A stretch of DNA of 64,000 nt from NCBI GenBank assembly GCA_002269645.1, contig NIVC01000462.1:277516-341515 (forward strand), in the 5' to 3' direction. Both the position numbers and the translations under genes were made by a program. Every line of letters starts with the position of its first letter. Position 1 is the first letter of the stretch. Positions 12,843 through 63,957 of this stretch are shown piece after piece. The notes beneath the pieces were generated by a model. That model was not told where the DNA came from. It searched no databases and saw only the letters and a program-made list of their open reading frames with translations. Origin of the DNA: Macrostomum lignano (taxonomy: Eukaryota).

Positions 12843-13010
12843 GGCTGTAGCCTAGTGGTTAGAGCGTCGGACTCACGACTGAAAAGTGAGTCGACTCTCG
12901 ACTCACTCGGGACAATTTGTGTCCTTGAGCAAGAAGACACTTAATTCTGCATTTCTGCAGTTCACCCAACTGTAAAACGGGTGCCAGCATTAGCTGGGGT
13001 ATGAGGTGCA
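12843..13010 (+). mobile_element. tRNA-derived SINE, copy 1
   Basis: tRNA-like head ggctgtagcctagtggttagagcgtcggactcacgac (box A), then the core tgtgtccttgagcaag..acacttaa..tgc..gttcacc..gtaaaa.gggtgccagcattagctgggg shared with three other copies in the window. Confidence 0.75.
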
Positions 13011-21003: not shown

Positions 21004-21933
21004 ATTAGGGATGCGTGTCCACTCCCGTCAGTCAACTGTCCCGAGATGTCGCTCGATTGATTAGGGCCGTGTTCGCTCCCGTCAGTCAACTGTCCCGAGA
21101 TGTCGCTCGATTGATTAGGGCCGTGTTCACTCCCGTCAGTCAACTGTCCCGAGATGTCGCTCGATTGATTAGGGCCGTGTTCACTCCCGTCAGTCAACTG
21201 TCCCGAGATGTCGCTCGATTGATTAGGGCCGTGTTCACTCCCGTCAGTCAACTGTCCCGAGATGTCGCTCGATTAATTAGGGCCGTGTTCACTCCCGTCA
21301 GTCAACTGTCCCGAGATGTCGCTCGATTGATTAGGGCCGTGTTCGCTCCCGTCAGTCAACTGTCCCGAGATGTCGCTCGATTGATTAGGGCCGTGTTCAC
21401 TCCCGTCAGTCAACTGTCCCGAGATGTCGCTCGATTGATTAGGGCCGTGTTCGCTCCCGTCAGTCAACTGTCCCGAGATGTCGCTCGATTGATTAGGGCC
21501 GTGTTCGCTCCCGTCAGTCAACTGTCCCGAGATGTCGCTCGATTGATTAGGGCCGTGTTCGCTCCCGTCAGTCAACTGTCCCGAGATGTCGCTCGATTGA
21601 TTAGGGCCGTGTTCGCTCCCGTCAGTCAACTGTCCCGAGATGTCGCTCGATTGATTAGGGCCGTGTTCGCTCCCGTCAGTCAACTGTCCCGAGATGTCGC
21701 TCGATTGATTAGGGCCGTGTTCGCTCCCGTCAGTCAACTGTCCCGAGATGTCGCTCGATTAATTAGGGCCGTGTTCACTCCCGTCAGTCAACTGTCCCGA
21801 GATGTCGCTCGATTGATTAGGGCCGTGTTCACTCCCGTCAGTCAACTGTCCCGAGATGTCGCTCGATTGATTAGGGATGCGTGTTCGCTCCCGTCAGTCA
21901 ACTGTCCCGAGATGTCGCTCGATTGATTAGGGC
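21004..21933. repeat. 54-bp tandem repeat, about 17 near-identical units
   Basis: Unit CCCGTCAGTCAACTGTCCCGAGATGTCGCTCGATTGATTAGGGCCGTGTTC(G/A)CT, with no unique spacers. Confidence 0.97.
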
Positions 21934-22221
21934 CCACCGAACCCCTTAGATTGTTCAGGTTGAACTGAAAATTCAGGCTAAAATGTACTAAACTAGAGAT
22001 ATTAAAATATTCATAAACACTTAGTAGATCCTGAGCAGCTACTATTTACTTTGTACTTTTTGCTCGCAATAGGCGTCGGCAGTTTGCATTCAAATTCTTT
22101 ATTTTAAGCAGCGAAAAAGAAAGCGGAAAAGGAGGTGTAAAAGGAGGTGTATGAGTCCTGGGTCGGCTGACTCCGGTCCGCAGGTCTCATGCAGCTCGCA
22201 AAGAGCTGCGTTTTCTCAGCC

Positions 22222-27270: not shown

Positions 27271-28278
27271 GTGTCAGGTGTTGGGTTTTGGGTGTCAGGT
27301 GCTGGGTGTTGAGTGTTAGTTGTTGAGTGTTGGATGTTGGGTGTCAGGTATTGAGGGTTGTACGTTGGGTGTTGGGTGTTGGATGTTGGGTGTTGGGTGT
27401 TAGGTGTCAGGTGTCAGGTGTCAGGTGTCAGGTGTCAGGTGTCAGGTGTTGGGTGTTGTGTGTCAGATGTTGGGTGTTGGGTGTTAGTTGTTGAGTGTTG
27501 GATGTTGGGTGTTAGGTGTTGTGTGTTAGGTGTTGGGTGTTGGGTGTTGGGTGTCAGGTGTTGGGTGTTGGGTGTTGGGTGTTGAGTGATGGGTGTCAGA
27601 TGTTGGGTGTTGGGTGTTAGTTGTTGAGTGTTGGATGTTGGGTGTCAGGTGTTGAGTGTCAGGTGTCAGGTGTTTGGTGTTGGTTGTTGGGTGTTGGGTG
27701 TCAGGTGTTGGGTGTCAGGTGTCAGGTGTTGGGTGTTGGGTGATGGGTGTTGGGTGTCAGGTGTCAGGTGTCAGGTGTCAGGTTTCAGGTGTCAGGTGTT
27801 GGGTGTTGGGTGTTGGGTGTCAGATGTTGGGTGTTGGGTGTTGGGCGTCAGATGTTGGGTGTTGGGTGTCAGGTGTTGGGTGTTGGTTATTGGGTGTCAG
27901 GTGTCAGGTGTCAGGTGTTGGGTGTTGGGTGTCAGGTGTCAGGTGTCAGGTGTCAGGTGTTGGGTGTTTGTTTTTGGATGTCAGATGTTGGGTGTTGGGT
28001 GTTAGTTGTTGAGTGTTGTATGTTGTGTTAGGTGTTGGGTGTTGGCTGTTGGGTGTCAGATGTTGGGTGTTGGGTGTTGGGCGTCAGATGTTGGGTGTTG
28101 GGTGTTGGGTGTTGGATGTCAGATGTTGTGGGTGTTGGGTGTCAGATGTTGGGTGTTGGGTGTTGGGTGTCAGGTGTTGGGTGTCAGGTGTCAGGTGTCA
28201 GGTGTTGGATGTTGGGTGTTGGGTGCTGGGTGTCAGGTGTCAGATGTTAAGTGTTGGGCGTCAGATGTTGGGTTTTGG
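27262..28278. repeat. Degenerate 7-bp GT-rich array (GGGTGTT / AGGTGTC)n
   Basis: Mixed 7-mer units over about 1 kb; they explain the repetitive Gly/Val/Cys/Trp ORFs. Confidence 0.95.
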
Positions 28279-28634
28279 GTGATTATGTATAATTTTTTAC
28301 TGTCTGGTATAAACGCAAAAAATCCTCCTTAGATAAGTAGTTGTAAGTATTGTGATGGGGTGAAATAGTTTTAGGTGTTAGGGTATTATGTGTCAATAGA
28401 TTTTAGTTGATGTTGATTTAAGGGGAATTTTTTGGGAGCGGGGGGCTGGTCGCTTTTTTTGTCCCCCTTAGATGAGGGACTGTAGGTAATGCATTGTGAT
28501 TGCTAGTTTTAAATATAAGAGCATTATGTATAATAAGATTTTAGTAGATGTTTATTTAAGTGAGATTTGGCAATTTTTTTGCGCCAGCGGCCCCGCTATC
28601 ACATCGTAGTAATTGTAATTGACATCTAAGGGCA

Positions 28635-33342: not shown

Positions 33343-33653
33343 ATGGCTGCCGGAGGAAGAACGCATGAAGACCGAGTGCTGGCAAATATAGAAGAGTTGA
33401 AATACACAAGCGAAGATTGCTGTGCGGCGACTTGTACCAGCACTAGTACCTCTGTAAACGAAGATGGCATCCCGATTCGCATGCACCAGTTTCCGAAGAA
33501 TCAGTCCATGGCATTGAAGTGGCAATCAATGCTGGAGTTACGAGCCATTTCACTCGAGAAGCTGTGGAAAATAAAGTGGAAGGTATGCAGCTTGCATTTT
33601 ACAGACGAGGCGTACAATTGCCCAAGACTACGCCATGACCGAAGTACAAGGCT
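33343..33653 (+). pseudogene. THAP zinc-finger N-terminus of the P-like transposase (5' half, split by the LINE)
   Basis: CCAATC...MHQFPKNQSMALKW...KVCSLHF. After removing the LINE and one TSD copy it continues in frame as RSTRLRWDAVP, the THAP AVP motif. Confidence 0.85.
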
Positions 33654-36600
33654 TGACTTACTTACTTGACTTGGCTGCAGGGGGCTCCGTGCGTCCGGAA
33701 ACAGCGAGGAGGCGTTGCCGCCCATTTCGCTAACCCCTGGCGACCACGGGCAGCTAGTGCTGCGGTGTCGCGCAGGGAGTTCCGGTGGCGCCGGCGTCCG
33801 CAGCGCGGTCCCCCTCAGGAGAGTCCAGGAGGTGGATGTCGCTCGCCCGGCAGCCCTTAGGTAGCGGACGAGCTGGCAGAGATTCTCGGGCCTGGAAACG
33901 TCGGAGAGGTCCGGGTTTGGGCCGAGGTAGGTGAGCCTGTCCTGAGTAAAGGCGGGGCATTCACAGATGAAGTGCTCCGCATTCTTGACACTGGAGAGGC
34001 AGAATGGGCATTCCTCACTGCGGATTTTTCCCTGGAGAAGGTGACGATGTCTGGCAAAGCAGCCATGACCCGAGAGGGCCATGGTAACCGCCCTGATGTC
34101 CCCCTGCGGTTGAGTCCAAGCAGGGCCCTGCGTAGGGCGGAGGAGGTACAGGGGACAGCCGCACGGGATTACCGGCAGTCGGGGGCGTTAGCCCACCTCT
34201 CCTTGTGCTTAGAAGCCACCCACTGGTTGATCCGAGTGGTGACAACGGCGATGGGGGTGGGGGCCACGGGCAGGGGACCAGTAAAAGAACCGGTCGAGTC
34301 AGCCTTGGCCAGGCGATCGGCCAGCTCGTTGCCGGGGTGGCCCGAATGCCCGGGGATCCACCTTAGGGACACCTTGTTGGAGGCGCCTAAGCGGTTGAGC
34401 TGCCCGATACAGCCGAGGACTGTACGCGAGCAGGTGGTGGTGCGCTCAAGGGCGTGAATCGCCGCTTGACTGTCCGAGTGGAGGGTAACTTACTTCCCCC
34501 AGACGCGCTGATTGTACAGCTCCATGGCGCAGAAGCTGATGGCGAGAACTTCGTTCTGGAAGACGGTGGAGCAGGTGCCGGTGTGTTGGGAGAAGGTCGC
34601 CACAGTTCTCCCTCCAGACACGATGCAGTAGCCGTATCCAGAGGCGGAGTTGTTTTGGGACCCGTCAGTGAAGCAGTGGATTTCATGGGGTTTCCAGTTG
34701 TCTCTCGCTTCATGGCGTGGTGGAATGCTGGTTTTGAATTTGAGCGGGGGCAGAGCGTGGACGGGATTCCGTCCGAGAGGGTCAGCAGGCCTCTCGCTGC
34801 TTCCAGGTCTCGCAGGCTGAGGTCGCAATGCGGCCGGAGGTTCCGCTTTCTGAAGGCAAACTGCTTCTGGATTTGGACACCCGCGTCAAGCAGACGATGG
34901 GTGGTTTTCATAGCCTCCCCTCTAACAAAGAGGTCGAGGGGGGAATGTCCAAGAAGGAGTTCATGCCGGCGAAGGGCATAGATGGAGCCGCGCTCATGAT
35001 AGCTCGACAAGCGCGGCCTTGCACCCTATTTAAAACCTCAAGAACCCCTTTCACCTCTAGGGCACTGTTCCAAATGAAGCCGGCGAAGGAGATGGCCGGT
35101 CTAACAATGGCAGTGTAAATCCACCAGAGGCGGCGGGGGGTGAGGCCCCAGGTAGTACCAAAAGCTCTGCGGATCTGCGCGAGAGTCGCGAGAGCTTTGC
35201 GGGCTTTAGTTTGGACGTGCGGGGTCCAGCTCAACCTGTGGTCGAGGGTGACGCCCAGACATCTAGTTTGTTTCTCCATGGCAACGGTTTGCCGTAGAGG
35301 GAGAGCAGTTCGATCCTCCAATTTCGGCGGCTGGTGAACATGATAGCCACGGTTTTAGACTCAGAGAACCTGAGACCGCAGCTATGTGCCCAGCGCTCGG
35401 CACGGTGGATGAAGGCTTGAAGGAGGTCCCTGAGGACCGCGGGCGATGGTCCAGCCACAGTAGAGGTAACATCGTCCGCATAGCCGACCTTCTGAACAGG
35501 GTCCGGATGCGGGCTGCAAAGCAGCTCGTCCATGACTAAGTTCCAGAGGATCGGGCTGAGGACTCCACCTTGCGGTCCGCCTTTCTGGACTTCCACGGAG
35601 CGTGAGTGTCCCAGGAGGTGCGAGGTGGCAGTACGATGGGAGACCATGTACATGATACAGCGGGTGAGGTGCTCGTGCGTGCCCCGGGATTCCAGGGCTC
35701 GCTTAAAGGCTTCAAAGAGCACATTGTTAAAAGCACCATCAATGTCGAGGAAAAGCGACAGCGCGTATCCACTGCCAAGCACGGCGCGCTCCAGCTTGTC
35801 GACAATGGCGTGCAGCGCACTTTCGATGGAACGTCCAGGACGAAAGGCGTGCTGATTTGGGGAGAGCGGGGAGTTCCTCAGCTCAACGAGAAGGCGCCAG
35901 AGCACCAGCCGTTCCATCAGTTTGAAGAAGAAGGAAGTCAGACTGATAGGGCGTAAGCTTTGGCGGAGTGATAGTCTCCCTTTCCTGGCTTGGGTATGAA
36001 GACTACCGTAGCCTCTTGCCAGGCTTTTGGCACATACCCGAGGGTAATGCTGGCCTTGAAGAAGTTGCAGAGGAGGCCAAGAAACCTGTCATTTTTAACT
36101 GCCTCATGAAGAAAGGCAGGATAAATGTTGTCAGGACCCGGGGACTTGAAAGGAGAGAAGGATTTTGCGGCGCGAGCCGTCGTCTCTCTAGTAATGATGG
36201 TCGAAGCCAGGATCTGTCCGCCCGGAGAGTGGTCCGGTGGGCCTAGCTGCGGTGCGGCACGTGGGAAAGAGCTGGTGAGCATAATGTCCAGCGATTCCCC
36301 AGGGTTCTCAGCGAGCCGGCCGTCCGGTCTTTTAATAACTGAGAGCTTTGACATTTGTCGAGGGTGAGAGCCTTAACTACGCGCGAAGTAGGGCGGGTGC
36401 CTTCTAACTCCGCGCAGTATTGGCGCCATTTGTCGGACTTGGCTTTCCTGGTTTCACGCTTAAAGTCGTGGATCGCTTCTTGATAGGCGGCCAGGTCAGC
36501 TGGGTCCTTGCTCTTGCGAGCTTTCCGTTGGAGGCACTTTGCCTTGCGCCGGAGGGATCCGAGCGCCGGGTGCCACCAGGGGGCGGATTTTTTGCCTTTG

Positions 36601-39566
36601 TAGGCTTTAAGAGAACAGGAAGCCTCATGGGCTGTCAGGACGGTCTTGCTGAGCAAGTCTGCAAGGTCATCCACTTCCTGACAGGTGGTTGGAGCGACGG
36701 TAGTCAGCTGATCTGTCTGGCATTTCAGGGTTTCCGTGAAAGCCGTCCAATCAGTGTTCCGGACGTTCCTTTTCCACAGAATGTGAGGCTTGGGGCAAGA
36801 GGATTGCAAACGAAAACGAACGAAGCGATGGTCAGACAGAGACTCCTCTTCGTCCCACACCTCCCAGTCCTTGACTAAAGGAGCCAAGCCATGGGAGACG
36901 AGGGTAACGTCGAGGGCTTCCGTCCATCGCCCGTTGTCAAAGGTGGGGGTTCCACCAATGTTGCAAAACTCAGTGTTGGTGGTGCAGATTTAAGCAAGGA
37001 GTTCCTCGCCTCTGCTATTGGAAATATTACTTCCCCAGTGGGTGTGGTGAGCGTTGATGTCGCCCGCCACCAGCAGCTCGAACCTACGGTTAGAGCAGTA
37101 GTCCACGAGGGAGGTGAGGTTGGGTGGAACCGCGGGGCCATCGCCAAGGATATAGATCGAGGCAATGATGACCGTGCGGTTGGTGATAATGTGGTTGGAC
37201 TGAATGACACAGAGGTCTCTGTCAGAGAGGTCCGGTCTGTGCCAAGCTTTGAGGTGGGTAGATACGAAAATGGCTGCTCTGGGGTTTTGGGGGTCTTGAA
37301 AACAGTCAAAACCAGCAGGAATATTCGGAATCTTACCTTTCTTTGTCCAGGGCTCCTGGAGTAGGATGATGCCCGGTTTCGCAAAGTTTGCCACCCGCAT
37401 CAGGTTGGTCGAGGCCGCGATGCAGTGGTGCAGGTTAAGCTGCAGGATGTCCACTCCGGAAATTCCACGAGTGGTCCGCGCAGCTTCCTGCCGGCTCAAG
37501 GCGAGTTGTGCAGGAGAGCTGCCTCTTCTGCCTCGCCGATAGCTCCAGGCTCCAGCTCCATGGGCTCCTCCCGGATGGATTCCATGGTCGAGGGCGAGGT
37601 CGCTACCTGGGCGGCATTCTCGCTCTCGGCCCGGTTTTCCGGGGGGGGCCGCAGTGGTGACACTGGGCTGGGGGTGGCTGCGGTTGGGGGCCTTGGCGGT
37701 GTCCAGCAGCTGCTTCGCGCGCTGAGTCAGACCAGAGCGGATAGTTGTCCGGGCGGGTTTCCGGCCCTTTCCACGTCCGCCTGTTGCTGCAGCTTTCGCG
37801 GCTTTCCCTCTGACAGGGTCCACGTCCTCGGAGGGGTCGTGACAACCGGGAGCTTCTTTTCCTGGGCGTTTCCGCGCGGCAGAGCCCCCGACTGCCCGCT
37901 TACGCTTCTCCGGGGGCGGTGGGCGGGTGGCGTCAGACTCAAAGCTAAAGAGCTGAATCTGCAACATCCCGACAGAGATGATGGACATGTCCGGGTAGCG
38001 GAGCATCCAGCTATCCGACAGTCCAAGAATAGCCGTGAAACCGTCTCCGCCCGGCTTGGAGATGGTCTCGTGAACTACGACACCGTTGGCCGGTAGCTCC
38101 GGGTTGGAGGCCACTAGCAGGTGACGCAGCTCGTCGGCCTTGGTGATGCAGCTGCGAGCCGGGATCCAGGCACGGTGCCGGTGTGTCCGGGGTCGCTCGT
38201 CCTCCCTGTAGATGAACAGGTTCTCCAGCTCCGTACCCCAGTCGAAGGTTTTCAGCAGCTCGAGGAGCTGCTGTCCTGACTGGCTGTCGGTGGGCTGGAT
38301 ATAGAGGGCTTGGTCCTCGACTTTCGTCTTTTGGACTCGAATAGTAGAGCCGCTCAAGGCCATCTTGACCAGGTGGGAGTCCAACCTGCGCCAGATAAGG
38401 TCGAGCTGTTCGGCCGTAAGAGGCGTCTCCTGGCCTTGGATAACCAGGGCCGGCTGCCTTTTGGCCATAGCCGCGTAGGTTCGCTTCGGCTTTGTGGTTT
38501 GGCCAGCGCCCCCCGCTTTGGATCCCTCCACGGCCGTGGGAGCTTCCACACGGGCAGAGGTCCGGTCACGGGAGGGGCCAGCCGCACCAGGAGCTTCGGC
38601 GGCACCTGACGCATCAGACCGGCGCGCGGGTCCACCCCCTTGTCGGATGTCGGTTCCTCCGCGGGGTTCGCAGAGTTACCGGCACCCTCCTCAGAGGTGG
38701 CCGGAGGGGCGGCTTTCGCATTCCTCCGTTCCTCCGCTTTGCGCTGGAGAAAGGCTTTGTAGCGAGCAATGCTACGGGCCTTCTTTTTCGAAATCTGAGG
38801 TCCGCTGTCTTGTCCAGCCACTCCGGTATTATCCTGAGCGGCGGCAGCGGCAGATTGAGAGGCACCGGGGGTTCCGGTGTTGCGAATGTCCGGCTGGGCC
38901 GCGGTGCCAACCTCGGTTGGTGCTCTAGCAGCCTCGGACGTGTCGGAGGTAAATGAATACTCCATGAGTCGCTGAAAGGCGAGTGGGGACTAGAGGTGAG
39001 AAGCCGCTGGGCCGTAACCCCAAACCCAACAACCAGGCCAAGAGGTAGCGACCGGGGGTGGCTTAAGCCCGTACCGGCCCGACCGCTAGCAACCGAGAAA
39101 CTCCCCGGCTAAGAGCCCGGCTTGGAAAAACCAGAGGCCGAACCAAAGGACCAACAGCACGGTACTACACTGGGCCCTTGAGGGAAGCAGGAGGACTGCC
39201 TCCGGAGCCTGCGGACTGGCCGCATACCCTGTTAAGGTCAGAGGGTGGTACCTGTTCCTCAGAGCCGTGGCCAGAGGTACCTGATACGCACAGGTGCACT
39301 TCCGGGCGGAGCCCGTACCCAACTTGGCCAAAAGGCCACGGATGCGTTGCCGCCGCCGGAGCCCAGTCAGTCCAGCAGCCCTAGAGCTGCCTTGAACACA
39401 TGCGGGGCGTGAACCCCTGGGTCGGCTTGCGAGTCAGCTTGGAGAGAGTTCTCCTGCCATTCCTGCACCAGAATAGAGGGGGTGCAGGTGTGTAGGATCG
39501 CAGACCTTAGCCCGTAGGCCTAGTCTGTCTCATGCTACACAGGCGTGCTGTACCCGCCATTGCATG
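33654..39566 (-). mobile_element. Full-length non-LTR retrotransposon, LOA/R1-group-like (ORF1, APE, RT, RNase H, CCHC), 5.9 kb, multiply frameshifted
   Basis: 14-bp TSD cgaagtacaaggct (33640-33653, 39567-39580) and a 3' tail of (AAGT)n-type repeats. APE: QLNLHH, LQEPW, GDINAHH, SDH. RT: PGPDNI, LDIDGAF, GGPQGGVLSPILWNLVMD, YADD, LGVTLD. RNase H: [26 protein letters not shown]-terminal CPFC..EHFICEC. ORF1 (ATG 38965) has a DUF4780-like AWIP...LL..NP.L segment. Confidence 0.92.
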
Positions 39567-39580
39567 CGAAGTACAAGGCT

Positions 39581-41310
39581 ACGGTGGGATGCTGTTCCTA
39601 ACAGAGAGCTGGTTTTGCCACGACTAATCAGGGAGAAGCCACTAGAAATAATTCGGAGTGACGATGCGGTTGATAATACGTACCCACCTGTTCTGTCGCG
39701 CTTTGACGTGGAAGACGCAGTTCCAGAAGCAGATCAGATTCCTTCAATGGCAGTTGTTTTAGCTAGCGCTGCTCCACCAGAACCAACTGCGTCTTGTTCT
39801 GCATCATTTCTACGACTGCATGCATCGTCTAGCAAAGTAGCTGGAAACCTACGACGAAAGCTGTGTCGGCAGTGTTATAAATCGCGAAGCCGAGAGGGTT
39901 ATATCTTCTATAGCGCGCGGTCTGATGAAAATAAAGCTCAGAGGGCGTGGCCGTCTCTCTAGGCCGTCACGTGTATTTATACCATAGACAGTAATATTCA
40001 TACGAGTATAGCCCAAGCTTTGGTGTCACACACATGCATATGCACACATACACAACAGGCAGGAGAAGACGATCGATAAGCTGCGGCGCAAAATCGAAGA
40101 CTCGCAGGTTGGAAAGTTCAGCAGCAGCAGCAGCAGCGCCCTCCACCGTCTAGTGCAGAGCTCTATGAAGCAAACAAAGTCTCGCCACCGTGTCATGCGT
40201 TGGGCTGTCGAAGACATCTGCTCTGCTATTCAAGTGCATCACAAAAGTCCTGCCGCGTACCGACTTCTGCGAGATCAGTGGAAGATGCCATTTCCATCAG
40301 AGACGTCAATTAAGCGGCGCATCAGATTGTTTTTTCAGGAAGAAGGCGTTTGTGAAGTTACCATGAAGCTGATGAGAAAAAAGTTGCAAGACTGCACAGA
40401 GAAAGAGCGAGTGGCCACTCTTTGCTTTGATGGAATGAGCTTATCAGGATGTGTGCGTTACAGACAGTACAAGGACAAGATAATTGGCTTTGAGACTAAT
40501 CCTGCTCAAGCGGATGCACCAAAAGTTGTAGACGAAGCGGTAGTAGGCGTAGTTCGCGGTATTTTGCACAACTGGAAGCAGTCGATTGCATATTACCCTG
40601 TGCATCGGAGTCTCGGACAGGAAGGTTTTCGTAACGCGATTGAAAGTTGTCTGACGGCGTGTCATCATGCAGGAATTATCGTTGTAGCTTTGGTTGCAGA
40701 CCAAGAGACAAGCCAGTGGAGCTACCAAGCTCTTCCAAGCCGTTTCTGCACCACCCAGTGACAAACGAGCCTGTTTTTGTCATCATTGATATCCCTCACT
40801 GCCTGAAAAATGCGCGAAATGCTTTGTTCAAGAACGACATTGTGTTCGACGATTGCAAAACAGCAAAATGGAAGCATGTTACGGACTTCTATCAAGCCGA
40901 TAGTCGCAACAAGCTTAAATTGGCACCAAGGTTAAGCGACAGTCACTTCAACCTACAGGTTGGAAACAAAATGAAAGTATCTCTCGCGGCGCAGATTTTC
41001 AGCCATTCAGTCGCCAGTGGAATCCGAACTTCGGTGTATCACAAAATAATAGAATCCGATGGAGAGCAAACAGCAGAGTTTTTAGATAGAATTAATGGCA
41101 TAAAAGACTAAATTGCTGCAGAATCACGTGAGCCATTCAGTTTTGAGATGCTTCCGACACGCAAATGTGACCTTCCCCTCGTGCTCCGTGCACACGGAGA
41201 TCGTCTGGCAGCAACTGTGCGTCAAGTTCGCTCGTCTCAGACAGCATCACTGGTGCCGCTGTGAGGCCAAGCCGCTGAAGGATAGGACAGCGCGATGCTC
41301 AGCAAGCTGA
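39581..41310 (+). pseudogene. Remainder of the P-like transposase (fragmented, internally deleted)
   Basis: SPAAYRLLR..PFPSETS, LCFDGM, WKQSIAYY, LVADQ, DIPHCLKNARN and KMKVSLAAQIFSHSVA, then a C..H-type C-terminal segment (41113-41310). Frameshift at about 40730. The segment carrying the third catalytic acid is not found. Confidence 0.82.
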
Positions 41311-50874: not shown

Positions 50875-51593
50875 CTAAGTTTTGATGAACACAGCCCACT
50901 CCGGTCCGGTCAGGCTGGCTGGCGGGAAGGCGAACGGCAGCAGGCGGCAGGCGAGCAGCTGCTTCGAGAAGACGGCGGCGCTGCAGTTGGCTTTGGCGCT
51001 GCACTGGAGCAGGCAGTCCGCGTCAGACTGGGCAGCGGCCGGCCAGGACGAGTCCACGGCAGAGGTCACCGTGATGTCCTTCAGCACAGTGTAGGCATTG
51101 CTTTCTGGAAGTTGTGGTTCCAACAAAAACCTACTCAATTAGATAAATTCGCAACTCCAAGAGAACGGAGCAAGGCTAACTTACTTGGGTAGTGCAGAGC
51201 GAACACGGAGTTGATGGTGAAGCCACCGCAAATCTGCTCTGGGTTTCCCTTGCACTGGCTGTTACATTTGCTATCGCTGAGCTGTCCGTGGAGTCCGTAG
51301 GAGCTGCCGCAGAAGCACTGCTTGCCGACCTGCACGCCGAAGTAGGGGAAGCCGAACAGAGAGCAGAAGTTGCTGCAGACCCCGAGCGTCATGTCAGGGC
51401 TGTACATTAATGCACCGTCGGTGATGTACGATCCCAGATTGTTAAGTCCATTCAGTGTTTTCAGGCCTGTCAAGTCTCTGTTTGGGTTAGCGGCGTCTTG
51501 GTAGCAACCGACATAAGAGAAATGAGCCACCCTGCCAGCCGCACAGGTCAAGAGGGCGCACAGCAACGCCGACTGCAGCTGGGAAATGCTCAT
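50875..51593 (-). CDS. Secreted WSC + PAN/apple-like protein, copy L (212 aa; exons 51185-51593 and 50875-51104)
   Basis: MSISQLQSALLCALLTCAAG signal-like start and an 8-Cys WSC domain. Phase-1 intron gtaagt...ttccag (80 nt). Exon 2 reads SNAYTVLK...WAVFIKT*. Confidence 0.85.
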
Positions 51594-52172: not shown

Positions 52173-52490
52173 TAGGTTGTAAGAATTCTCAGTATTTGCT
52201 AAGGTAGATGCCGACTTTTCAAGCCGTTTGATGTCCTCTAGTTCTTGCACACCTATACCTGTGAAATTGGCTGAGTGCGAAGGCTCACTTCCCAAATTAG
52301 CTTCTGCGAAAGCCATTGCAAGTCTGTTCGATGAAGAAGAGGTTCATTGTGAGCCAGTTTATACTGGTAGGACTAGATCAAATAGGAAAAAGAGAAGAAA
52401 GCAATAAATTTGCAGCAGTGCGAATTTACCTCAAACCAATGTAGTCGAACTGATTTGCAACTTATGACAAAAACGAAAATTTCATTTTTT

Positions 52491-53360
52491 CCTTGCGAGT
52501 CCTGTGAGCGGCTATTTGATAATTTTTTTGGTTGACAATTTTCTAGAGAATTCTTGAGACGCTTCTTGATAATCTCTTAGCAATAAGACTGATTCATCTT
52601 ATTACAGGGTTCTTTGCTTGGTTAGGTTTCTTAAATGCTATTATATCCTATATGTATTTTATTGTATATTTTATTTTATTATACTATAATATATATTAGA
52701 ATATGCTATTATTTAGTCCATAAATCTAATGGACTAGTCACAACTTATCACAACTACGGATGTTTCTCAGTGGATTCGAATAGTACTGTACTATTGTGCC
52801 TCACTTATTATCCAGGAGCTTATCAATGGTAATAATGTATTCTGCATACTCTGTGCTTTGTCAGCTTGCTATCCATTGCAACAGAGTACAGAGTACAACC
52901 ATTGCTATGCAAACCAATAAACCAAGGTAACAACGGTACAACGGTAACTTCTAGTGGTCCTTGCAATAAATAATCAAGTAAAAATTTCACTCATTTGTAT
53001 TAAAAATAGATTGCTTACACTTACACTTCGAACAAAACACGACTCCAAACACGACTCACTCTTATAAATGTCATAGATGCTTTGACACAAGTTTATCATG
53101 ACAATGAGAATAAATATAAATTATTAGTACAGGTACTTGTACGGCCAACGATCCTCTTTACGAACTTGGCTCCCACAGTATGCCTAAACTGTTTATAGTA
53201 AAAAATTATAAAGCTACTCATGTTTGGCGCAACTTTATGTGCCTATGGTAACGCATTTAAGTGCCTAACAGCAAAAATTGTGGAAGAGAATCCTACTAGG
53301 AAGTTCCTTTGTTCTTGAATTTGAGTTCACAAAGTTTGGGCCGAGTAGTTAAATAGAAAT
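52491..53360 (+). pseudogene. Relic of a third GIMAP repeat unit (last codons plus 3' flank)
   Basis: ccttgcgagtcctgtg..gctatttgataa..tttggttgacaatttt matches the GIMAP C-terminal LASPV..LFD..FG* and the downstream flank. Further blocks (ctattgtgcctcac, gagaataaatataaattatt, ctaggaagttcct) match 57260-57750. Confidence 0.7.
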
Positions 53361-54967: not shown

Positions 54968-55303
54968 GAATCTGCGTCTCCAGGACTGAACCTGCGTCTC
55001 CAGGACTGAACCTGCGTCTCCAGGACTGAACCTGCGTCTCCAGGACTGAACCTGCGTCTCCAGGACTGAACCTGCGTCTCCAGGACTGAACCTGCGTCTC
55101 CAGGACTGAACCTGCGTCTCCAGGACTGAACCTGCGTCTCCAGGACTGAACCTGCGTCTCCAGGACTGAACCTGCGTCTCCAGGACTGAACCTGCGTCTC
55201 CAGGACTGAACCTGCGTCTCCAGGACTGAACCTGCGTCTCCAGGACTGAACCTGCGTCTCCAGGACTGAACCTGCGTCTCTAGGACTGAATCTGCGGCTC
55301 CAG
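54968..55303. repeat. 20-bp minisatellite (CCAGGACTGAACCTGCGTCT)n, about 16 units, about 650 bp upstream of GIMAP copy 1
   Basis: Direct tandem repeats. Confidence 0.97.
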
Positions 55304-55957: not shown

Positions 55958-56947
55958 ATGTCAGCCGATCAGTCGCAAGACTCCAGCCAGATCACTACGG
56001 TGGTGCTGATGAGCAAGACAGGCAGCGGAAAGAGCTCTCTGGCCAACACCCTAATGAACGAGAAAAGCTTCATAGTCGGAAACGGCATGAGGTGGCAGAC
56101 GAAGCAGTGCGAGGCACAGATGCGAACGGTCCGCGGTCGCAGCCTGCTGGTGGTGGACACTCCCGGAACCATGGACTCCAAGGACGTTAACATGCCGCAG
56201 GGTGAGCTGCTGCGCACGCTGAACAAGTGTCCGTGCGGCGTTGACGCCTTTCTCGTGGTCGCCAGAGCGGACGTCCGCTTCACAAACGAAGAGTGCCTGG
56301 CTATCCGCCAGACTGTGGAAGTGTTCGGTCCGGAGTCGTGCAAGCGCGTCATCGTGGTGTTCAGCAGAGGTGACCATTTTGACAACGACATCAACGAATT
56401 TAAAAATAAAGAGCTGAAAGTCGCGCGAGAAGAAATTCCTGAGCTCGACAAGATGATGAAGGACTTCGGAGACCGCTACGTGCTGATGGACAACGGCAAG
56501 AGGTGCGACCCGGGTATGCAGGAACGGCAGGTGGCAACGCTGATGGGCCTTATCGATGAGGTATCGAAGCTGAACCCGAGCAAGTACAAGTACCTGGATA
56601 AGCAGACTGAGGAGCGGAAACGCCGAGAGGAGACTGAGGCGCAGAAGCAGAATGACGTAGAAGATGGAAAAGATGGAAGCCGAGATCAAGCTTTTAAAGC
56701 AGCAGCAGCATCAGCGACAGCAGCAGCAGCATCAGCGGCAGCAGCAGCAGCATCAGCAGCAGCAGCAGCAGCATCAGCAGCATCAGCAGCAGCATCAGCA
56801 GCAGCATCAGCAGCATCAGCGGCAGCAGCAATCAATATATGCGCAGCGCCAACAGCCACAGCTCAGTTTAGGCTTTGTGGGCATTGTGAGCAGTCTTGGA
56901 CAGGGGGCTGGAGCAATCTTTGCAAGTCCTGTGGTCGACGCTGCTAA
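55958..56947 (+). CDS. GIMAP/AIG1-family GTPase, copy 1 (C-terminus frameshifted into a polyAla frame)
   Basis: SKTGSGKSS P-loop, QTKQC, VVDTPG, GVDAFLVV..RFTNEE, VVFSRGD and ERQVATLMGLI, all AIG1-type motifs. Upstream TATAAA (55653-55658) and a putative 5'UTR intron (55790-55938). The ancestral C-terminus lies in ORF 56664-56972. Confidence 0.85.
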   Translation: MSADQSQDSSQITTVVLMSKTGSGKSSLANTLMNEKSFIVGNGMRWQTKQCEAQMRTVRGRSLLVVDTPGTMDSKDVNMPQGELLRTLNKCPCGVDAFLVVARADVRFTNEECLAIRQTVEVFGPESCKRVIVVFSRGDHFDNDINEFKNKELKVAREEIPELDKMMKDFGDRYVLMDNGKRCDPGMQERQVATLMGLIDEVSKLNPSKYKYLDKQTEERKRREETEAQKQNDVEDGKDGSRDQAFKAAAASATAAAASAAAAAASAAAAAASAASAAASAAASAASAAAAINICAAPTATAQFRLCGHCEQSWTGGWSNLCKSCGRRC

Positions 56948-57868
56948 GCTATTTGATAAAGTTTTTGGCTGACAGTTTTATTAAGAACTCCTTACACTCT
57001 CCTATCTATAGACAACCGCTGTCCTATGAGATTGAGTTAATTTCTGAGTTCTTTGCTTCGGTAGTTTTGTTGAATACTCCATGGTTATTCAGTTTTGAAA
57101 CCTTGTAAATTAGTGACACAACAAATTTTGCGAAATGGACTTTTTGAGGTCTATGGCCCAGAGACACGCTCTCTGGCTTCTACCCTTTCTGGCCACTGCG
57201 TGGCTGGCGGGAGAAGTATTTTGTTGTTGTTGCTGAAATTGACTCAAATTATGCTGTACTATTGTGCCTCACTGCCTATCCAGAAGCTTATCAATAGTGA
57301 TTCTTTGCTTGATCAGCTCGCTATCCATTACAGCAGGCTCAAGAATTTATGCCTCATTCTGCTGTGCAAACCAATTAATATCGGTGAAATAGAAAGTTTG
57401 CGCTCAGTGTTGAAAAATTAGTAGTCCTGAGTTAAGCTTTAATCCAGACAAGACTAACCTTATTTAAAATCCTAGATGCTATTGGTGTAAAAACAGTGAG
57501 AATAAATATAAATTATTTAATACAGGTGTTTGTACCAACAAGCCACACTTCGAGCTTGGCTCCTTCCGTATGCATCAACTTTTAATAGCCAAGAATAAAT
57601 ATAAAGATTTCCGTGTTCTACGCGATATTATGTGCCTGTGGTAACTTAGTCAAGGGCCTAGCAGCAAAAATCATTGAAGATATTTCTGCTAGGAAGTTCC
57701 TATGTTCTTCAATCTGATTTCACAAAATTGGGGGCAAGTAGTTAAATAGAATTACGTCGGACTCTCGCGTCAAAGTCACGAGTTCGATTCCGTTCAGGCC
57801 GCATCAATGACAAGGTCATTGTTGTTCAATAGAAAATTTATTTTTGGACTGAACTGTCTACAAAGCGA

Positions 57869-58194
57869 CTCCAGAACTGAAACTGCGTCTCCAGGACTGA
57901 ACCTGCGTCTCCAGAACTGAAACTGCGTCTCCAGGACTGAACCTGCGTCTCCAGGACTGAACCTGCGTCTCCAGGACTGAACCTGCGTCTCCAGGACTGA
58001 ACCTGCGTCTCCAGGACTGAACCTGCGTCTCCAGGACTGAACCTGCGTCTCCAGGACTGAACCTGCGTCTCCAGGACTGAACCTGCGTCTCCAGGACTGA
58101 ACCTGCGTCTCCAGGACTGAACCTGCGTCTCCAGGACTGAACCTGCGTCTCCAGGACTGAACCTGCGTCTCCAGGACTGAACCTACATCTCCAG
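57869..58194. repeat. Second copy of the 20-bp minisatellite, about 650 bp upstream of GIMAP copy 2
   Basis: Same unit as 54968-55303, in the same position within the duplicated unit. Confidence 0.97.
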
Positions 58195-58841: not shown

Positions 58842-59738
58842 ATGTCAGCCGATCAGCCGCAAGACTCCAGCCAGATCACTACGGTGGTGCTGATGAGCAA
58901 GACAGGCAGCGGAAAGAGCTCTCTGGCCAACACCCTATTGAACGAGAAAAGCTTCGAAGTCGGAAACGGCATGAGGTCGCAGACCAAACAGTGCGAGGCA
59001 CAGATGCGAACGGTCCGCGGTCGCAGCCTGCTGGTGGTGGACACTCCCGGAACCATGGACTCCAAGGACGTTAACATGCCGCAGGGTGAGCTGCTGCGCA
59101 CGCTGAACAAGTGTCCGTGCGGCGTTGACGCCTTTCTCGTGGTCGCCAGAGCGGACGTCCGCTTCACCAACGAAGAGTGCCAGGCCATCCGTCAGACTGT
59201 GGAAGTGTTCGGCCCGGAGTCGTGCAAGCGCGCCATCGTGGTGTTCAGCAGAGGCGACCATTTTGACAACGACATCAACGAGTTCAAAGAAGAGTTGAAG
59301 GCCGCCCGAGGAGAAATTCCTGAGCTCGACAAGATGATGAAGGACTTCGGAGACCGCTACGTGCTGATGGACAACGGCAAGAGGTGCGACCCGGGTATGC
59401 AGGAACGGCAGGTGGCATCGCTGATGGGCCTTATCGATGAGGTATCGAAGCTGAACCCGAGCAAGTACTTGAAGAAGGACCTGGAAAAACAGACTGAGGA
59501 GCGGAAACGCCGAGAGGAGGCGGAGGCCCAGAAACAGCGGGATGAAGCAAAGAAGATGGATAAGATGAAAGCCAAGGTCAAGCTTCTAGAACAGCAGCAG
59601 CAACTACTAAGTGCGCAGCGCCAACAGCCCCAGCCAGGTTTTGTGGACATTATGAGCAGCATCGGACAGGGGGCTGGAGCAATCCTTGCGAGTCCTGTGG
59701 TCGGCGTCGCTAAGCTTGTTGATTCTGCTTTTGGTTGA
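58842..59738 (+). CDS. GIMAP/AIG1-family GTPase, copy 2 (298 aa, intact; coiled coil plus hydrophobic C-terminal helix)
   Basis: Same AIG1 motifs as copy 1, then a charged coiled coil (EKQTEERKRREEAEAQKQRDEAKKMDKMKAKVKLLEQQ) and GFVDIMSSIGQGAGAILASPVVGVAKLVDSAFG*. Confidence 0.9.
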   Translation: MSADQPQDSSQITTVVLMSKTGSGKSSLANTLLNEKSFEVGNGMRSQTKQCEAQMRTVRGRSLLVVDTPGTMDSKDVNMPQGELLRTLNKCPCGVDAFLVVARADVRFTNEECQAIRQTVEVFGPESCKRAIVVFSRGDHFDNDINEFKEELKAARGEIPELDKMMKDFGDRYVLMDNGKRCDPGMQERQVASLMGLIDEVSKLNPSKYLKKDLEKQTEERKRREEAEAQKQRDEAKKMDKMKAKVKLLEQQQQLLSAQRQQPQPGFVDIMSSIGQGAGAILASPVVGVAKLVDSAFG

Positions 59739-63078: not shown

Positions 63079-63957
63079 GTTGAAGGGCGATTCTCAATGA
63101 TGTTGAAGGGCGATTCTCAATGATGTTGAAGGGCGATTCTCAAGGATGTTGGAGGGCGATTCTCAATGATGTTGAAGGGCGATTCTCAATGATGTTGAAG
63201 GGCGATTCTCAAGGATGTTGGAGGGCGATTCTCAATGATGTAAGGGCGATTCTCAATGATGTTGAAGGGCGATTCTCAATGTGGGTTGGGGAGGGCGACT
63301 CTCAATGTGGGTTGGGGAGGGCGATTCTCAATGTGGGTTGGGGAGGGCGATTCTCAATGTGGGTTGGGGAGGGCGATTCTCAATGTGGGTTGGGGAGGGC
63401 GATTCTCAATGTGGGTTGGGGAGGGCGATTCTCAATGTGGGTTGGGGAGGGCGATTCTCAATGTGGGTTGGGGAGGGCGATTCTCAATGTGGGTTGGGGA
63501 GGGCGATTCTCAATGTGGGTTGGGGAGGGCGATTCTCAATGTGGGTTGGGGAGGGCGATTCTCAATGTGGGTTGGGGAGGGCGATTCTCAATGTGGGTTG
63601 GGGAGGGCGATTCTCAATGTGGGTTGGGGAGGGCGATTCTCAATGTGGGTTGGGGAGGGCGATTATCAATGTGGGTTGGGGAGGGCGATTCTCAATGTGG
63701 GTTGGGGAGGGCGATTATCAATGTGGGTTGGGGAGGGCGATTCTCAATGTGGGTTGGGGAGGGCGATTCTCAATGTGGGTTGGGGAGGGCGATTCTCAAT
63801 GTGGGTTGGGGGAGGCGATTCTCAATGTGGGTTGGGGGGGGCGATTCTCAATGTGGGTTGGGGAGGGCGATTCTCAATGTGGGTTGGGGAGGGCGATTCT
63901 CAATGTGGGTTGGGAAGGGCGACTCTCAATGTGGGTTGGGGAGGGCGATTCTCAATG
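63079..63957. repeat. G-rich tandem array: 23-bp units (GTTGAAGGGCGATTCTCAATGAT) switching to 26-bp units (GAGGGCGATTCTCAATGTGGGTTGGG)
   Basis: Direct tandem repeats sharing the core gggcgattctcaatg; they explain ORF 63120-63989. Confidence 0.96.

What the first reader, a model, noticed from the sequence alone, without database searches (positions are those of the whole stretch)
56640..56972. GIMAP copy 1: a frameshift converts an expanded CAG/CAT polyQ-H tract into polyAla with a new Cys-rich tail
Seen: relative to copy 2 (cgggatgaagcaaag, 15 nt), copy 1 has aatgacgtag (10 nt) at about 56650-56659. The ancestral frame (KMEKMEAEIKLLK-Q/H tract-...LGQGAGAIFASPVVDAAKLFDKVFG*) is still fully open as ORF 56664-56972, and its Q tract has grown from about 5 codons to over 40. 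The frame actually joined to the GTPase reads about 43 Ala/Ser followed by CGHC-x12-CKSC-GRRC*. Both frames are open across the repeat. Inference: a dual-frame C-terminus that swaps a membrane-anchor-like helix for a polyAla linker and a possible CxxC-CxxC metal site. Repeat slippage of non-triplet size, or frameshifting, could toggle the two forms. It may also be a young pseudogene or an assembly error.
Basis: partly seen in the sequence, partly recalled or inferred. Interest (0 to 1): 0.7.

Follow-up and report, generated by a model that had tools for sequence, protein, structure and literature searches.

The report
Frameshifted flatworm GIMAP paralogue with unselected tail
One of two neighbouring immune-type GTPase (GIMAP) genes in the flatworm Macrostomum lignano carries an old frameshift that replaces its conserved tail with an unselected alanine-rich, cysteine-containing one; this is ordinary decay in a recombining gene array, not a two-frame switch.

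Summary
Copy 1 (55958-56947) differs from copy 2 (58842-59738) by a net 5-nt loss at 56651-56660. A 132-nt CAG/CAT tract is therefore read as 44 Ala/Ser/Thr residues, followed by CGHC-x11-CKSC-GRR-C.

The window is Macrostomum lignano contig NIVC01000462.1. A second paralogous contig carries two more copies with the same frameshifted 3' end, so this is not an assembly error and it predates the subgenome split.

The dual-frame reading fails:
- A TAG (56658-60) closes the old frame in all three frameshifted copies.
- The two sister copies each carry one further, independent stop in the old frame.
- The "new" frame is already open for 49 codons in intact copies, with 3 of its 5 Cys.
- Neither frame shows purifying selection in the tail (old frame 11 synonymous : 24 non-synonymous; new frame 7:28, plus 1:4 among the frameshifted copies).
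- All repeat periods (3, 9, 12, 21 nt) preserve the frame, so slippage cannot toggle it.

The 5' GTPase part is exchanged among copies by gene conversion or unequal crossing-over, so its intact reading frame does not prove function. Best reading: a decaying, tail-less paralogue. No transcript or read data could be reached.

The parts
55958..56947 (+). Copy 1 ORF as it stands (329 aa): AIG1/GIMAP GTPase, coiled coil, 44-residue Ala/Ser/Thr tract and a 38-residue Cys-containing tail. This is the frameshifted 'F-type'.
   Evidence: ORF list. Pfam AIG1 E 8.7e-35. AlphaFold2 models the GTPase confidently, but residues 281-321 have pLDDT below 50.
55958..56584 (+). 5' GTPase module, shared and exchanged among all copies (gene conversion or unequal crossing-over tract).
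   Evidence: Copy 1 vs copy 2: dS 0.093, dN 0.023, about the same as copy 2 vs its counterpart in another genome block (0.080, 0.024). Variants are shared in a mosaic across six copies. Copies B and C on L003 are identical here.
56585..56972 (+). Old, diverged 3' module of the F-type (coiled-coil end, frameshift patch, repeat, tail).
   Evidence: dS 0.379 and dN 0.144 vs copy 2. The same segment gives 0.036 and 0.005 between intact copies. Fisher test on synonymous differences, 5' vs 3': P = 4e-4. The module is shared by three F-type copies.
56651..56660 (+). Frameshift patch 'aatgacgtag', a net loss of 5 nt against 'cgggatgaagcaaag' in copy 2.
   Evidence: Alignments. Identical in window copy 1 and in L003 copies A and B.
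56658..56660 (+). TAG stop in the old (tail) frame, directly downstream of the indel.
   Evidence: A>T, Lys>stop. Present in all three F-type copies.
56669..56669 (+). T>A change that removes a TAA which closes the now-used frame in intact copies. Without it the protein would end 4 codons after the shift.
   Evidence: Shared by all F-type copies.
56698..56830 (+). Interrupted CAG/CAT/CGR tract with 21-nt periodicity, 120 nt longer than in copy 2.
   Evidence: Tandem Repeats Finder: period 21, 6.3 copies, 93% matches, 0 indels. Codon structure: longest pure CAG run is 6. L003 copy A has a version 45 nt shorter.
56664..56972 (+). Remnant of the old reading frame (102-aa ORF: polyQ/H plus a moderately hydrophobic tail). 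Not joined to the GTPase.
   Evidence: The corresponding frame in both sister copies has an extra stop. Substitutions are 11 synonymous: 24 non-synonymous, not different from neutral (P = 0.23).
56832..56947 (+). New-frame tail INICAAPTATAQFRLCGHCEQSWTGGWSNLCKSCGRRC*.
   Evidence: Substitutions in the new frame from the frameshift site (56651) to 56972 are 7 synonymous: 28 non-synonymous (P = 0.72 vs neutral). Best Pfam matches are sub-threshold zinc ribbons.
58842..59738 (+). Copy 2: intact 'I-type' GIMAP (298 aa), an annotated GenBank protein and the terminal copy of the array.
   Evidence: The last 34 residues are identical in all three intact copies.
54968..55303 (.). 20-bp minisatellite at the head of unit 1.
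   Evidence: Tandem Repeats Finder. Homologous arrays precede every GIMAP unit in the window, L001 and L003.
57865..58194 (.). 20-bp minisatellite at the head of unit 2.
   Evidence: Tandem Repeats Finder.
52490..52553 (+). Relic of a still older unit ('unit 0'): the last ~8 codons '..RLFDNFFG*' plus 3' flank. Further flank pieces lie at 52773-52884 and 53101-53358.
   Evidence: BLAST 70-79% identity to the 3' ends and flanks of copies 1 and 2. Translation. Alignment A2.

Best explanation
Copy 1 is a member of an old frameshifted class ('F-type') within a recombining tandem array of AIG1/GIMAP GTPase genes in Macrostomum lignano.

Shown:
- The array has two kinds of 3' end. The intact I-type (coiled coil, QQQQ, conserved moderately hydrophobic tail) is always the last copy.
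- The F-type always lies upstream. It carries a net loss of 5 nt, a TAG in the old frame, a CAG/CAT expansion with 21-nt period, a 6-nt insertion and about 19% substitutions.
- The old frame is closed in every F-type copy.
- The frame now read is the -1 frame, which happens to be open in intact copies too.
- Neither frame shows purifying selection in the tail.
- Copy number differs between paralogous blocks: 1, 2 and 3 units.

Inferred:
- The 5' GTPase module is a common pool shuffled between F and I copies by gene conversion and unequal crossing-over. This keeps the F copies' GTPase reading frame intact-looking, whether or not they function.
- The polyAla/Ser stretch and Cys-rich tail are an unselected by-product of the frame change.
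- Any product is a GTPase that has lost the family's conserved C-terminal segment.

My split: about 55% a non-functional, decaying copy and about 30% an expressed, tail-less GTPase with a junk tail. There is no dual coding and no repeat-driven toggle.
For: Identity and family:
- The window is M. lignano contig NIVC01000462.1.
- The proteins match the AIG1 family. Best solved relatives are GIMAP7, GIMAP4 and GIMAP5.

Three independent F-type copies:
- Window copy 1 and L003 copies A (9646-10590) and B (13692-14681) share every F-specific indel and substitution.
- The old frame has the shared TAG plus an independent TGA in A and TAA in B.
- The new frame is open for 49 codons, with 3 of the 5 Cys, in all three intact copies.

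Selection tests in the tail:
- Old frame 11 synonymous: 24 non-synonymous (P = 0.23 vs neutral). New frame 7:28 (P = 0.72).
- Among F-type copies, the new frame shows 1:4.
- The new frame staying open in all three copies has a chance probability of 0.7-0.8.

Recombination and turnover:
- Divergence is mosaic: dS 0.093 in the 5' part against 0.379 in the 3' part, Fisher P = 4e-4. Upstream non-coding differs by 10.5%; 3' flanks are 24-27% different.
- 5' variants are shared in a reticulate pattern. L003 copies B and C are identical in the 5' part.
- The array holds 1, 2 or 3 units in three paralogous blocks, and the window has a dead relic upstream.

Other:
- Copy 1 has Trp at Ser46, where 40 of 43 homologues have Ser. 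This is two residues before the switch-I Thr.
- AlphaFold2 gives pLDDT below 50 for the new tail.
- All repeat periods are multiples of 3.
Against: - The 329/329/314-aa reading frames of all three F-type copies are intact, and all five Cys are kept.
- In the 5' part the copy 1 vs copy 2 differences are 12 synonymous: 11 non-synonymous. This fits constraint on both copies (P = 0.84). It fits 'copy 1 neutral' only marginally (P = 0.02-0.03). Exchange with intact copies weakens this test, but it does not by itself bias the ratio.
- A stop that would have truncated the shifted protein after 4 codons was lost (56669).
- No read, transcript or peptide data could be reached, so expression is unknown.
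- Absence from the GenBank annotation is weak evidence. [quoted passage not shown]
Confidence: 0.68

Rival explanations
1. The F-type is a working gene with a new functional C-terminus. The frameshift replaced the hydrophobic segment with a long Ala/Ser helix and a new zinc-ribbon-like CxxC-x11-CxxC knuckle pair. This would be neofunctionalisation by reading an overlapping frame.
For: - The reading frame is intact in three copies, and all five Cys are kept despite 4-5 tail substitutions.
- Two substitutions were needed to give this product, and both are present. T>A at 56669 removes a stop. A>G at 56886 turns CGHY into CGHC.
- The best Pfam matches of the tail are zinc-ribbon models (DZR_2 E 0.054, Zn_ribbon_3 E 0.082).
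- AlphaFold2 runs the coiled-coil helix on through the Ala tract (residues 211-285).
- The 5' synonymous: non-synonymous ratio fits constraint.
Against: - New-frame substitutions are 7 synonymous: 28 non-synonymous on the stem and 1:4 among the copies, which is neutral.
- Changes between the two knuckles are radical (W>R, W>L, L>H).
- Three of the five Cys and the stop position pre-exist in the unused frame of intact copies.
- The Pfam scores are about half the cut-off.
- pLDDT is below 50 in the tail.
- Keeping the frame open and keeping the Cys are both likely by chance (0.7-0.8; about 0.5 by my own hand estimate, 15 Cys bases in 114, not a tool result).
- Runs of about 40 alanines are, from general knowledge, usually aggregation-prone.
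Confidence: 0.13
2. The broken tail is bypassed at the RNA level. One route is splicing from the shared GAG|GTATCG site of an F copy (window 56561) to the same site in the downstream intact copy. Another is a 43-nt intron (56657-56699, GAC|GTAGAA...TTTTAAAG|CAG) that would restore the old frame.
For: - GenBank model PAA51098.1 (Mlig012322g2) spans L003 9583-17190. Its protein is exactly copy A's 5' part (231 aa) plus copy C's 3' part (105 aa).
- A formally canonical GT-AG junction is possible at GATGAG|GTATCG.
- Expanded CAG tracts can act as splice acceptors (PMC10614865, abstract).
- The 43-nt candidate exactly restores the frame.
Against: - Joins between tandem near-identical copies are a common artefact of spliced mapping and transcript assembly.
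- No such model exists for the window's pair. Copy 2 is annotated on its own, without introns.
- 371 GT..AG pairs in the right phase exist by chance. The donor and acceptor are weak, and the same GAG|GTATCG site sits unspliced in intact copies.
- The 43-nt route would be useless in the two sister copies, whose old frame has further stops.
Confidence: 0.07
3. One reading: a maintained dual-frame C-terminus, switched by ribosomal frameshifting or by non-triplet repeat slippage.
For: - In the window copy, both frames are open from 56664 to their stops.
- Frameshifting and non-AUG translation on CAG repeats are known from human repeat diseases (PMC4231732).
Against: - The old frame carries extra stops in both sister copies and the TAG in all three.
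- All repeat periods are multiples of 3. The tract is heavily interrupted. The observed length difference is 45 nt.
- The old frame shows no constraint.
- 14 ATG triplets precede the internal ATG at 56664.
Confidence: 0.03
4. An assembly or polishing artefact of the PacBio/Canu assembly.
For: - The assembly is built from PacBio reads with Pilon polishing (PMC5730564).
- The genome is highly redundant: 93% of read pairs map to several places (PMC10733133).
Against: - The identical 5-nt loss, TAG, 6-nt indels and tail substitutions occur in three separately assembled copies on two contigs.
- The lesion is a 10-vs-15-nt patch with several substitutions, not a homopolymer error.
- Even with the frame restored, the TAG would stop the old frame.
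Confidence: 0.02

Closest known systems
GIMAP/AIG1 (IAN) GTPases, including membrane-anchored (GIMAP1, 3, 5) and soluble (GIMAP4, 7) members
   Same: - AIG1 domain followed by a long helix or coiled coil.
- Best solved matches are GIMAP7 (6e-29), GIMAP4 and GIMAP5.
- The genes sit in a tandem cluster with pseudogenes and turnover, as in vertebrates and snails (PMC8201404; PMC7053062).
- The intact copies end in a conserved, moderately hydrophobic segment, in the position of the GIMAP1/3/5 anchor.
   Different: - This is a flatworm family. Nothing on it was found in the literature searched.
- The first Gly of the P-loop is Ser, and the His of the conserved box is Asp, in all copies.
- The tail hydropathy (1.45) is below the usual transmembrane threshold, and AlphaFold2 does not model it.
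Duplicated pseudogenes kept similar to their functional neighbour by gene conversion (general knowledge, for example CYP21A1P/CYP21A2)
   Same: - Tandem neighbour of an intact gene.
- Mosaic divergence with a sharp boundary.
- A disabling lesion outside the converted tract.
- Copy-number change by unequal crossing-over.
   Different: - The conceptual reading frame here stays open for 329 aa.
- The lesion changes only the last quarter of the protein.
New C-termini created by frameshift after gene duplication (reading an overlapping frame; from memory: Raes and Van de Peer 2005; Okamura et al. 2006)
   Same: - A duplicate whose 3' end is read in another frame, giving an unrelated tail.
- The alternative frame was open beforehand.
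   Different: No sign that the new tail is under selection. The described functional cases are conserved across species.
PolyQ-to-polyAla frame change on CAG repeats in human repeat-expansion diseases (PMC4231732)
   Same: The same repeat read as CAG (Gln) or GCA (Ala).
   Different: - There the change is translational, on long pure repeats.
- Here it is a fixed genomic 5-nt loss upstream of an interrupted, 21-nt-periodic tract.
The rat lyp allele of Gimap5 (a frameshift that truncates the protein; PMC8201404)
   Same: A frameshift in a GIMAP gene that removes the C-terminal part.
   Different: - lyp lies inside the GTPase domain and is a recent loss-of-function allele with a phenotype.
- Here the GTPase domain is spared, intact paralogues remain, and the lesion is old.

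Membership tests
GIMAP / AIG1 GTPase family | AIG1 domain detected above the curated threshold | tested here: met
   Pfam PF04548: copy 1 scores 120 bits (E 8.7e-35) and copy 2 scores 135 bits, against a cut-off of 27. The top PDB hits are GIMAP7, 4, 5, 2 and 1.
GIMAP / AIG1 GTPase family | GTP-binding motifs G1 (GxxxxGKS), G2 Thr, G3 DxxG, G4 | tested here: met
   T21, G22, G24, K25, S26, T48 and D67-T-P-G70 are invariant or nearly so across 46 homologues and are present in copy 1. F135-S-R-G-D sits at G4. Deviations: all M. lignano copies have Ser at the first Gly of G1. Copy 1 alone has Trp at the near-invariant Ser46.
GIMAP / AIG1 GTPase family | Conserved box between G3 and G4 (consensus PGPHAFLLV...RFT.EE) | tested here: inconclusive
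   Copies 1 and 2 read CPCGVDAFLVVARADVRFTNEE. The hydrophobic core and RFT.EE are kept, but PGPH is replaced.
GIMAP / AIG1 GTPase family | C-terminal helical or coiled-coil extension | tested here: met
   AlphaFold2 gives a helix at 211-260 in copy 2 and at 211-285 in copy 1.
Tail-anchored GIMAP subgroup (GIMAP1/3/5-like) | C-terminal transmembrane segment | tested here: inconclusive
   Best 19-residue Kyte-Doolittle mean is 1.45 for copy 2 and 1.52 for the old frame of copy 1, below the customary 1.6. AlphaFold2 pLDDT is below 50 with no helix. The segment is identical in the three intact copies. Localisation cannot be tested here.
Pseudogene (duplicated, non-processed) | Disabling lesion relative to functional paralogues | tested here: met
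   Net 5-nt loss plus a TAG in the old frame. The conserved C-terminal segment is lost from the product.
Pseudogene (duplicated, non-processed) | Neutral evolution (dN/dS about 1) | tested here: inconclusive
   The tail is neutral in both frames. The 5' GTPase part shows 12 synonymous: 11 non-synonymous differences, which fits constraint. That part is exchanged with intact copies, so the test is not clean.
Pseudogene (duplicated, non-processed) | No functional transcript or protein | not testable with these tools
   No M. lignano read-derived proteins are in the collections searched. Copy 1 is absent from the GenBank proteins, but that annotation was filtered against repeats.
Programmed frameshift / dual-coding gene | Both frames conserved open among relatives | tested here: not met
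   The old frame has additional stops in both sister copies.
Programmed frameshift / dual-coding gene | Purifying selection detectable in each frame | tested here: not met
   Old frame 11 synonymous: 24 non-synonymous. New frame 7:28, and 1:4 among the frameshifted copies. None differs from neutral.
Zinc ribbon / CxxC...CxxC metal site | Significant match to a zinc-ribbon family, or a confident fold with four clustered Cys | tested here: not met
   DZR_2 E 0.054 and Zn_ribbon_3 E 0.082, about 13 bits against a 27-bit cut-off. PDB matches have E 0.3. pLDDT is below 50. Only the spacing pattern fits.

The most novel reading that the evidence does not exclude
The F-type copies are expressed, selected genes: anchor-less GIMAP GTPases. 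Their conserved hydrophobic end was replaced, through a fixed frameshift, by a polyAla/Ser helix and a newly formed zinc-ribbon-like CxxC-x11-CxxC tail. On this reading the stop-loss at 56669 and the Tyr>Cys change at 56886 were adaptive steps. This would be a natural, datable case of a new protein module born from an overlapping frame, kept alongside its ancestor in one recombining array.
Probability: 0.12. Interest if true: 0.55.

Novelty: new member of a known kind. Interest (0 to 1): 0.2.

Why it matters
Mostly as a clean negative. A striking-looking pattern (two open frames, polyQ turned into polyAla, new CxxC motifs) dissolves once paralogues are compared.

It also documents three things:
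- A flatworm GIMAP/AIG1 array, for which no literature was found in the searches made.
- Modular evolution in that array. The GTPase module is homogenised among copies, while two alternative 3' modules persist side by side.
- Copy-number change (1, 2 or 3 units) between the paralogous blocks of a recently polyploid genome.

It warns annotators that an intact reading frame in such arrays is not evidence of function. If the F-type proved to be expressed, it would be a tractable model, in a transgenic-capable animal, for how anchor-less GIMAPs or new C-terminal modules arise.

Tried and rejected
1. Independent read or transcript evidence. The exact copy 1 protein and the 102-aa old-frame ORF are not in the 15-billion-protein collection. 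A search with the full ORF was swamped by low-complexity words. A search with residues 1-245 found only M. lignano GenBank proteins and distant GIMAPs. It found nothing read-derived, even for the expressed copy 2, so the collections hold no M. lignano read assemblies.
2. Literature. There are no papers with 'Mlig012322', or with 'Macrostomum lignano' plus 'GIMAP'. A search for intron sizes gave nothing useful.
3. A simple 'accelerated decay of a young duplicate' model. This was rejected when synonymous divergence proved mosaic and older 3' flank homology and a unit-0 relic appeared.
4. Using the low dN/dS of the GTPase part as proof of function. This was set aside because 5' variants are shared in a mosaic between F and I copies.
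5. Intron rescue. Enumeration gave 371 in-phase GT..AG pairs, so the existence of one carries no weight.
6. Poly(A) signals. AATAAA lies about 450 nt after the stop in intact copies and about 530-620 nt after it in copy 1, which is uninformative.
7. AlphaFold2 on both copies. The tails have low confidence in both, so this neither supports a membrane helix nor a metal site.
8. Pfam and PDB searches with the tails alone gave only sub-threshold pattern matches.
Full report
**What is in the sequence.**
The region holds two tandem, intron-less AIG1/GIMAP GTPase genes. Copy 1 is the ORF 55958-56947 (329 aa). Copy 2 is the ORF 58842-59738 (298 aa). Both match Pfam AIG1 far above threshold, and their best solved relatives are GIMAP7, GIMAP4 and GIMAP5.

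Aligned at the DNA level, copy 1 differs from copy 2 by indels of +3, -6, -5, +120 and +6 nt. Only the 5-nt loss shifts the frame: 'aatgacgtag' at 56651-56660 against 'cgggatgaagcaaag'. Downstream, a 132-nt CAG/CAT/CGR tract is read as GCA/TCA. This gives 35 Ala, 8 Ser and 1 Thr, followed by INICAAPTATAQFRLCGHCEQSWTGGWSNLCKSCGRRC*. The old frame survives as a separate 102-aa ORF, 56664-56972.

The coordinates were one base off. The Cys spacing is x11, not x12. The old frame is closed by a TAG at 56658-60, just after the indel.

**How much of this is beyond chance.**
- CAG/CAT has no stop in any sense frame, so openness across the repeat means nothing.
- The frame copy 1 now uses is open in intact copy 2 for 49 codons, to the same TAA. 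There it reads ...CAAPTAPARFCGHYEQHRTGGWSNPCESCGRRR*, which already contains three of the five Cys.
- One stop in that frame (TAA in 'GGATAAGATG') had to be lost. It was lost by T>A at 56669.
- Starting from copy 2, 35 neutral substitutions in the 189-nt tail create 1.0-1.2 stops in the old frame on average. One is observed.

**Origin and context.**
Copy 2's protein is an exact GenBank protein of Macrostomum lignano assembly GCA_002269645.1, contig NIVC01000462.1. That assembly was built from PacBio reads with Canu and polished with Pilon using Illumina DNA and RNA reads. [quoted passage not shown] The absence of copy 1 from the protein set is therefore weak evidence.

The DV1 line genome consists of three paralogous elements about 2% apart (PMC10733133). 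I recovered the two other blocks:
- L001 (contig NIVC01001968.1) has a single intact copy.
- L003 (contig NIVC01003505.1) has three copies.
  - A: 9646-10590, 314 aa.
  - B: 13692-14681, 329 aa.
  - C: 16291-17190, 299 aa.

**The decisive comparison.**
A six-sequence alignment shows two discrete kinds of 3' end.
- The intact 'I-type' is found in window copy 2, L001 and L003-C. It is always the last copy, next to a gene whose product matches the Pfam PAP2 family.
- The frameshifted 'F-type' is found in window copy 1, L003-A and L003-B.

All three F-type copies share:
- the 6-nt and 5-nt losses;
- the TAG in the old frame;
- the stop-loss at 56669;
- the 6-nt insertion;
- essentially all tail substitutions.

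The lesion is therefore not an assembly error, and it predates the divergence of the paralogous blocks.

In the old frame, L003-A has an additional TGA (L003 10553) and L003-B an additional TAA (L003 14584), each independent. Only the window copy happens to lack a second stop, so the old frame is not maintained.

The new frame is open in all three copies. With the 5-9 substitutions that separate them, that outcome has a 0.7-0.8 probability by chance. Those changes are 1 synonymous: 4 non-synonymous in the new frame (P>L, W>R, W>L, L>H).

On the branch separating F from I, tail substitutions are:
- 11 synonymous : 24 non-synonymous in the old frame (P = 0.23 vs neutral);
- 7 synonymous: 28 non-synonymous in the new frame (P = 0.72).

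Neither frame shows purifying selection. By contrast, the last 34 residues of the I-type tail are identical in all three intact copies.

**A recombining array.**
Divergence between copies 1 and 2 is mosaic.

| Segment | Copy 1 vs copy 2 | Between intact copies |
|---|---|---|
| 5' CDS, 55958-56584 | dS 0.093, dN 0.023 | dS 0.080, dN 0.024 |
| 3' CDS, 56585-56972 | dS 0.379, dN 0.144 | dS 0.036, dN 0.005 |

- The Fisher test on synonymous differences, 5' vs 3', gives P = 4e-4.
- Upstream non-coding sequence differs by 10.5%.
- The 3' flanks are only 73-76% identical.
- A relic of a still older unit lies upstream. It keeps the last ~8 codons and the 3' flank (52490-52553, 52773-52884, 53101-53358).

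Within the 5' GTPase module, variants are shared in a reticulate pattern:
- L003-B and L003-C are identical there.
- The M33/I39/W46 trio is shared by window copy 1 and L003-A.
- A cluster at codons 181-186 is shared by L003-A and L001.

Each unit starts with a 20-bp minisatellite.

The simplest account is an old array whose 5' modules are homogenised and reshuffled by gene conversion and unequal crossing-over, while two alternative 3' modules persist. Copy number then drifts between 1, 2 and 3 units. As a consequence, the intact GTPase frame of copy 1 and its low dN/dS (0.23-0.25) cannot be read as proof of function. The ratio 12 synonymous: 11 non-synonymous does fit constraint better than neutrality of copy 1 (P = 0.02-0.03). 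I count this as real, if weak, evidence against a completely dead gene. Against it, copy 1 has Trp at Ser46, a position where 40 of 43 homologues have Ser, two residues before the switch-I Thr.

**The repeat.**
- The tract has 21-nt periodicity (93% matches, no indels).
- It is interrupted by 8 CAT and 3 CGR codons.
- Its longest pure CAG run is 6.
- L003-A has a version 45 nt shorter.

All periods and the one observed length change are multiples of 3, so slippage cannot switch frames.

**The tails as protein.**
- AlphaFold2 with 45-46 homologues models the GTPase and the long helix confidently in both copies.
- In copy 1 the helix runs on through the Ala tract (residues 211-285).
- Both tails have pLDDT below 50.
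- Hydropathy of the I-type tail (1.45) is below the usual transmembrane threshold. 'Membrane anchor' is therefore plausible by analogy with GIMAP1/3/5 (PMC8201404) but unproven.
- The new tail's best Pfam matches are zinc-ribbon models at about half the cut-off. Only the CxxC-x11-CxxC spacing fits.

**Possible RNA-level bypass.**
GenBank protein PAA51098.1 (Mlig012322g2) equals L003-A's 5' part plus L003-C's 3' part. A formally canonical junction is possible at GATGAG|GTATCG. This could be a real read-through and splice product that skips the F tail. More likely it is a mapping or assembly artefact between tandem near-identical copies.

A 43-nt GT..AG candidate (56657-56699) would restore the old frame in the window copy. 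However, 371 such in-phase pairs exist by chance, and the old frame is broken further in the sister copies.

**Verdict.**
Copy 1 is one of three copies of an old, frameshifted 3'-module variant in a recombining GIMAP array. The polyAla/Ser and Cys-rich tail is an unselected by-product of reading a frame that was already open. The old frame is dead, and there is no dual coding or toggle.

Whether the F-type still serves as a tail-less GTPase (about 30%) or is a pseudogene kept looking intact by exchange with its neighbours (about 55%) cannot be settled without transcript data, which these tools could not reach. This is an ordinary kind of event in a family known for expansion and loss (PMC7053062). 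Interest is low.

Noticed in passing
window 52490-52553, 52773-52884, 53101-53358: Relic of an older third GIMAP unit. It keeps the last ~8 codons ('RLFDNFFG*') plus 3'-flank and spacer homology at 70-79% identity. It shares 'LFD' with copy 1's tail end, so some copy 1 vs copy 2 tail differences are derived in copy 2.
   Followed up: partly
L003 9583-17190 (contig NIVC01003505.1): GenBank gene model PAA51098.1 (Mlig012322g2, 'partial') joins the 5' part of frameshifted copy A to the 3' part of intact copy C. The 6.6-kb 'intron' contains the whole of copy B. This is either a chimeric transcript or a mapping artefact.
   Followed up: partly
window 54968-55303 and 57865-58194; L001 8510-9359; L003 about 12669-13104: A 20-bp minisatellite (GAACCTGCGTCTCCAGGACT) heads every GIMAP unit. 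It is about 850 bp long in L001, the block that has only one unit. That fits loss of the frameshifted copy by recombination between arrays.
   Followed up: partly
L003 13692-14330 vs 16291-16930: The 5' GTPase parts of copies B (frameshifted) and C (intact) are identical at every site that varies among the six copies. This points to a very recent gene conversion.
   Followed up: yes
window 56502-56516 equivalent; L001 and L003 copy A: A tight cluster of changes (KRCDPGM > KKRDTEV or KRCDTEV, codons 181-186) is shared by L001's single copy and L003 copy A but by no other copy. It is a haplotype patch moved between copies.
   Followed up: partly
window 55958-56947, residues 19 and 96 (all M. lignano copies): All copies have Ser in place of the first P-loop Gly (SKTGSGKS) and Asp in place of the near-invariant His of the conserved box (PGPHA > CGVDA). 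These are lineage-specific departures from the GIMAP consensus.
   Followed up: no
window 33500-38965 (- strand): Fragments of a non-LTR retrotransposon. An endonuclease/exonuclease/phosphatase domain (ORF 36990-38549) and a reverse transcriptase (ORF 35231-35917) lie in separate ORFs in a 58-59% GC island. A related fragment lies upstream of the GIMAP gene in L001.
   Followed up: partly
window 40153-41111 (+ strand): A transposase of the TNP/THAP9-like kind, split over two overlapping ORFs (RNase H N-terminal domain E 1.5e-22; GTP-binding insertion domain E 6.4e-19). It is probably a broken DNA-transposon copy.
   Followed up: partly
window 51135-51593 (-) and 1786-2295 (-): Two ORFs with WSC domains (E 2.4e-19 and 2.8e-15). 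The first lies just upstream of the GIMAP array and is conserved in both other blocks.
   Followed up: partly
window 1290-1768, 10375-11691, 21014-21934, 27277-28281, 63084-63957: Large tandem arrays with periods of 20, 23, 54, 7 (GGTGTTG) and 26 nt. Several create long artefactual ORFs and strong local GC skew.
   Followed up: no
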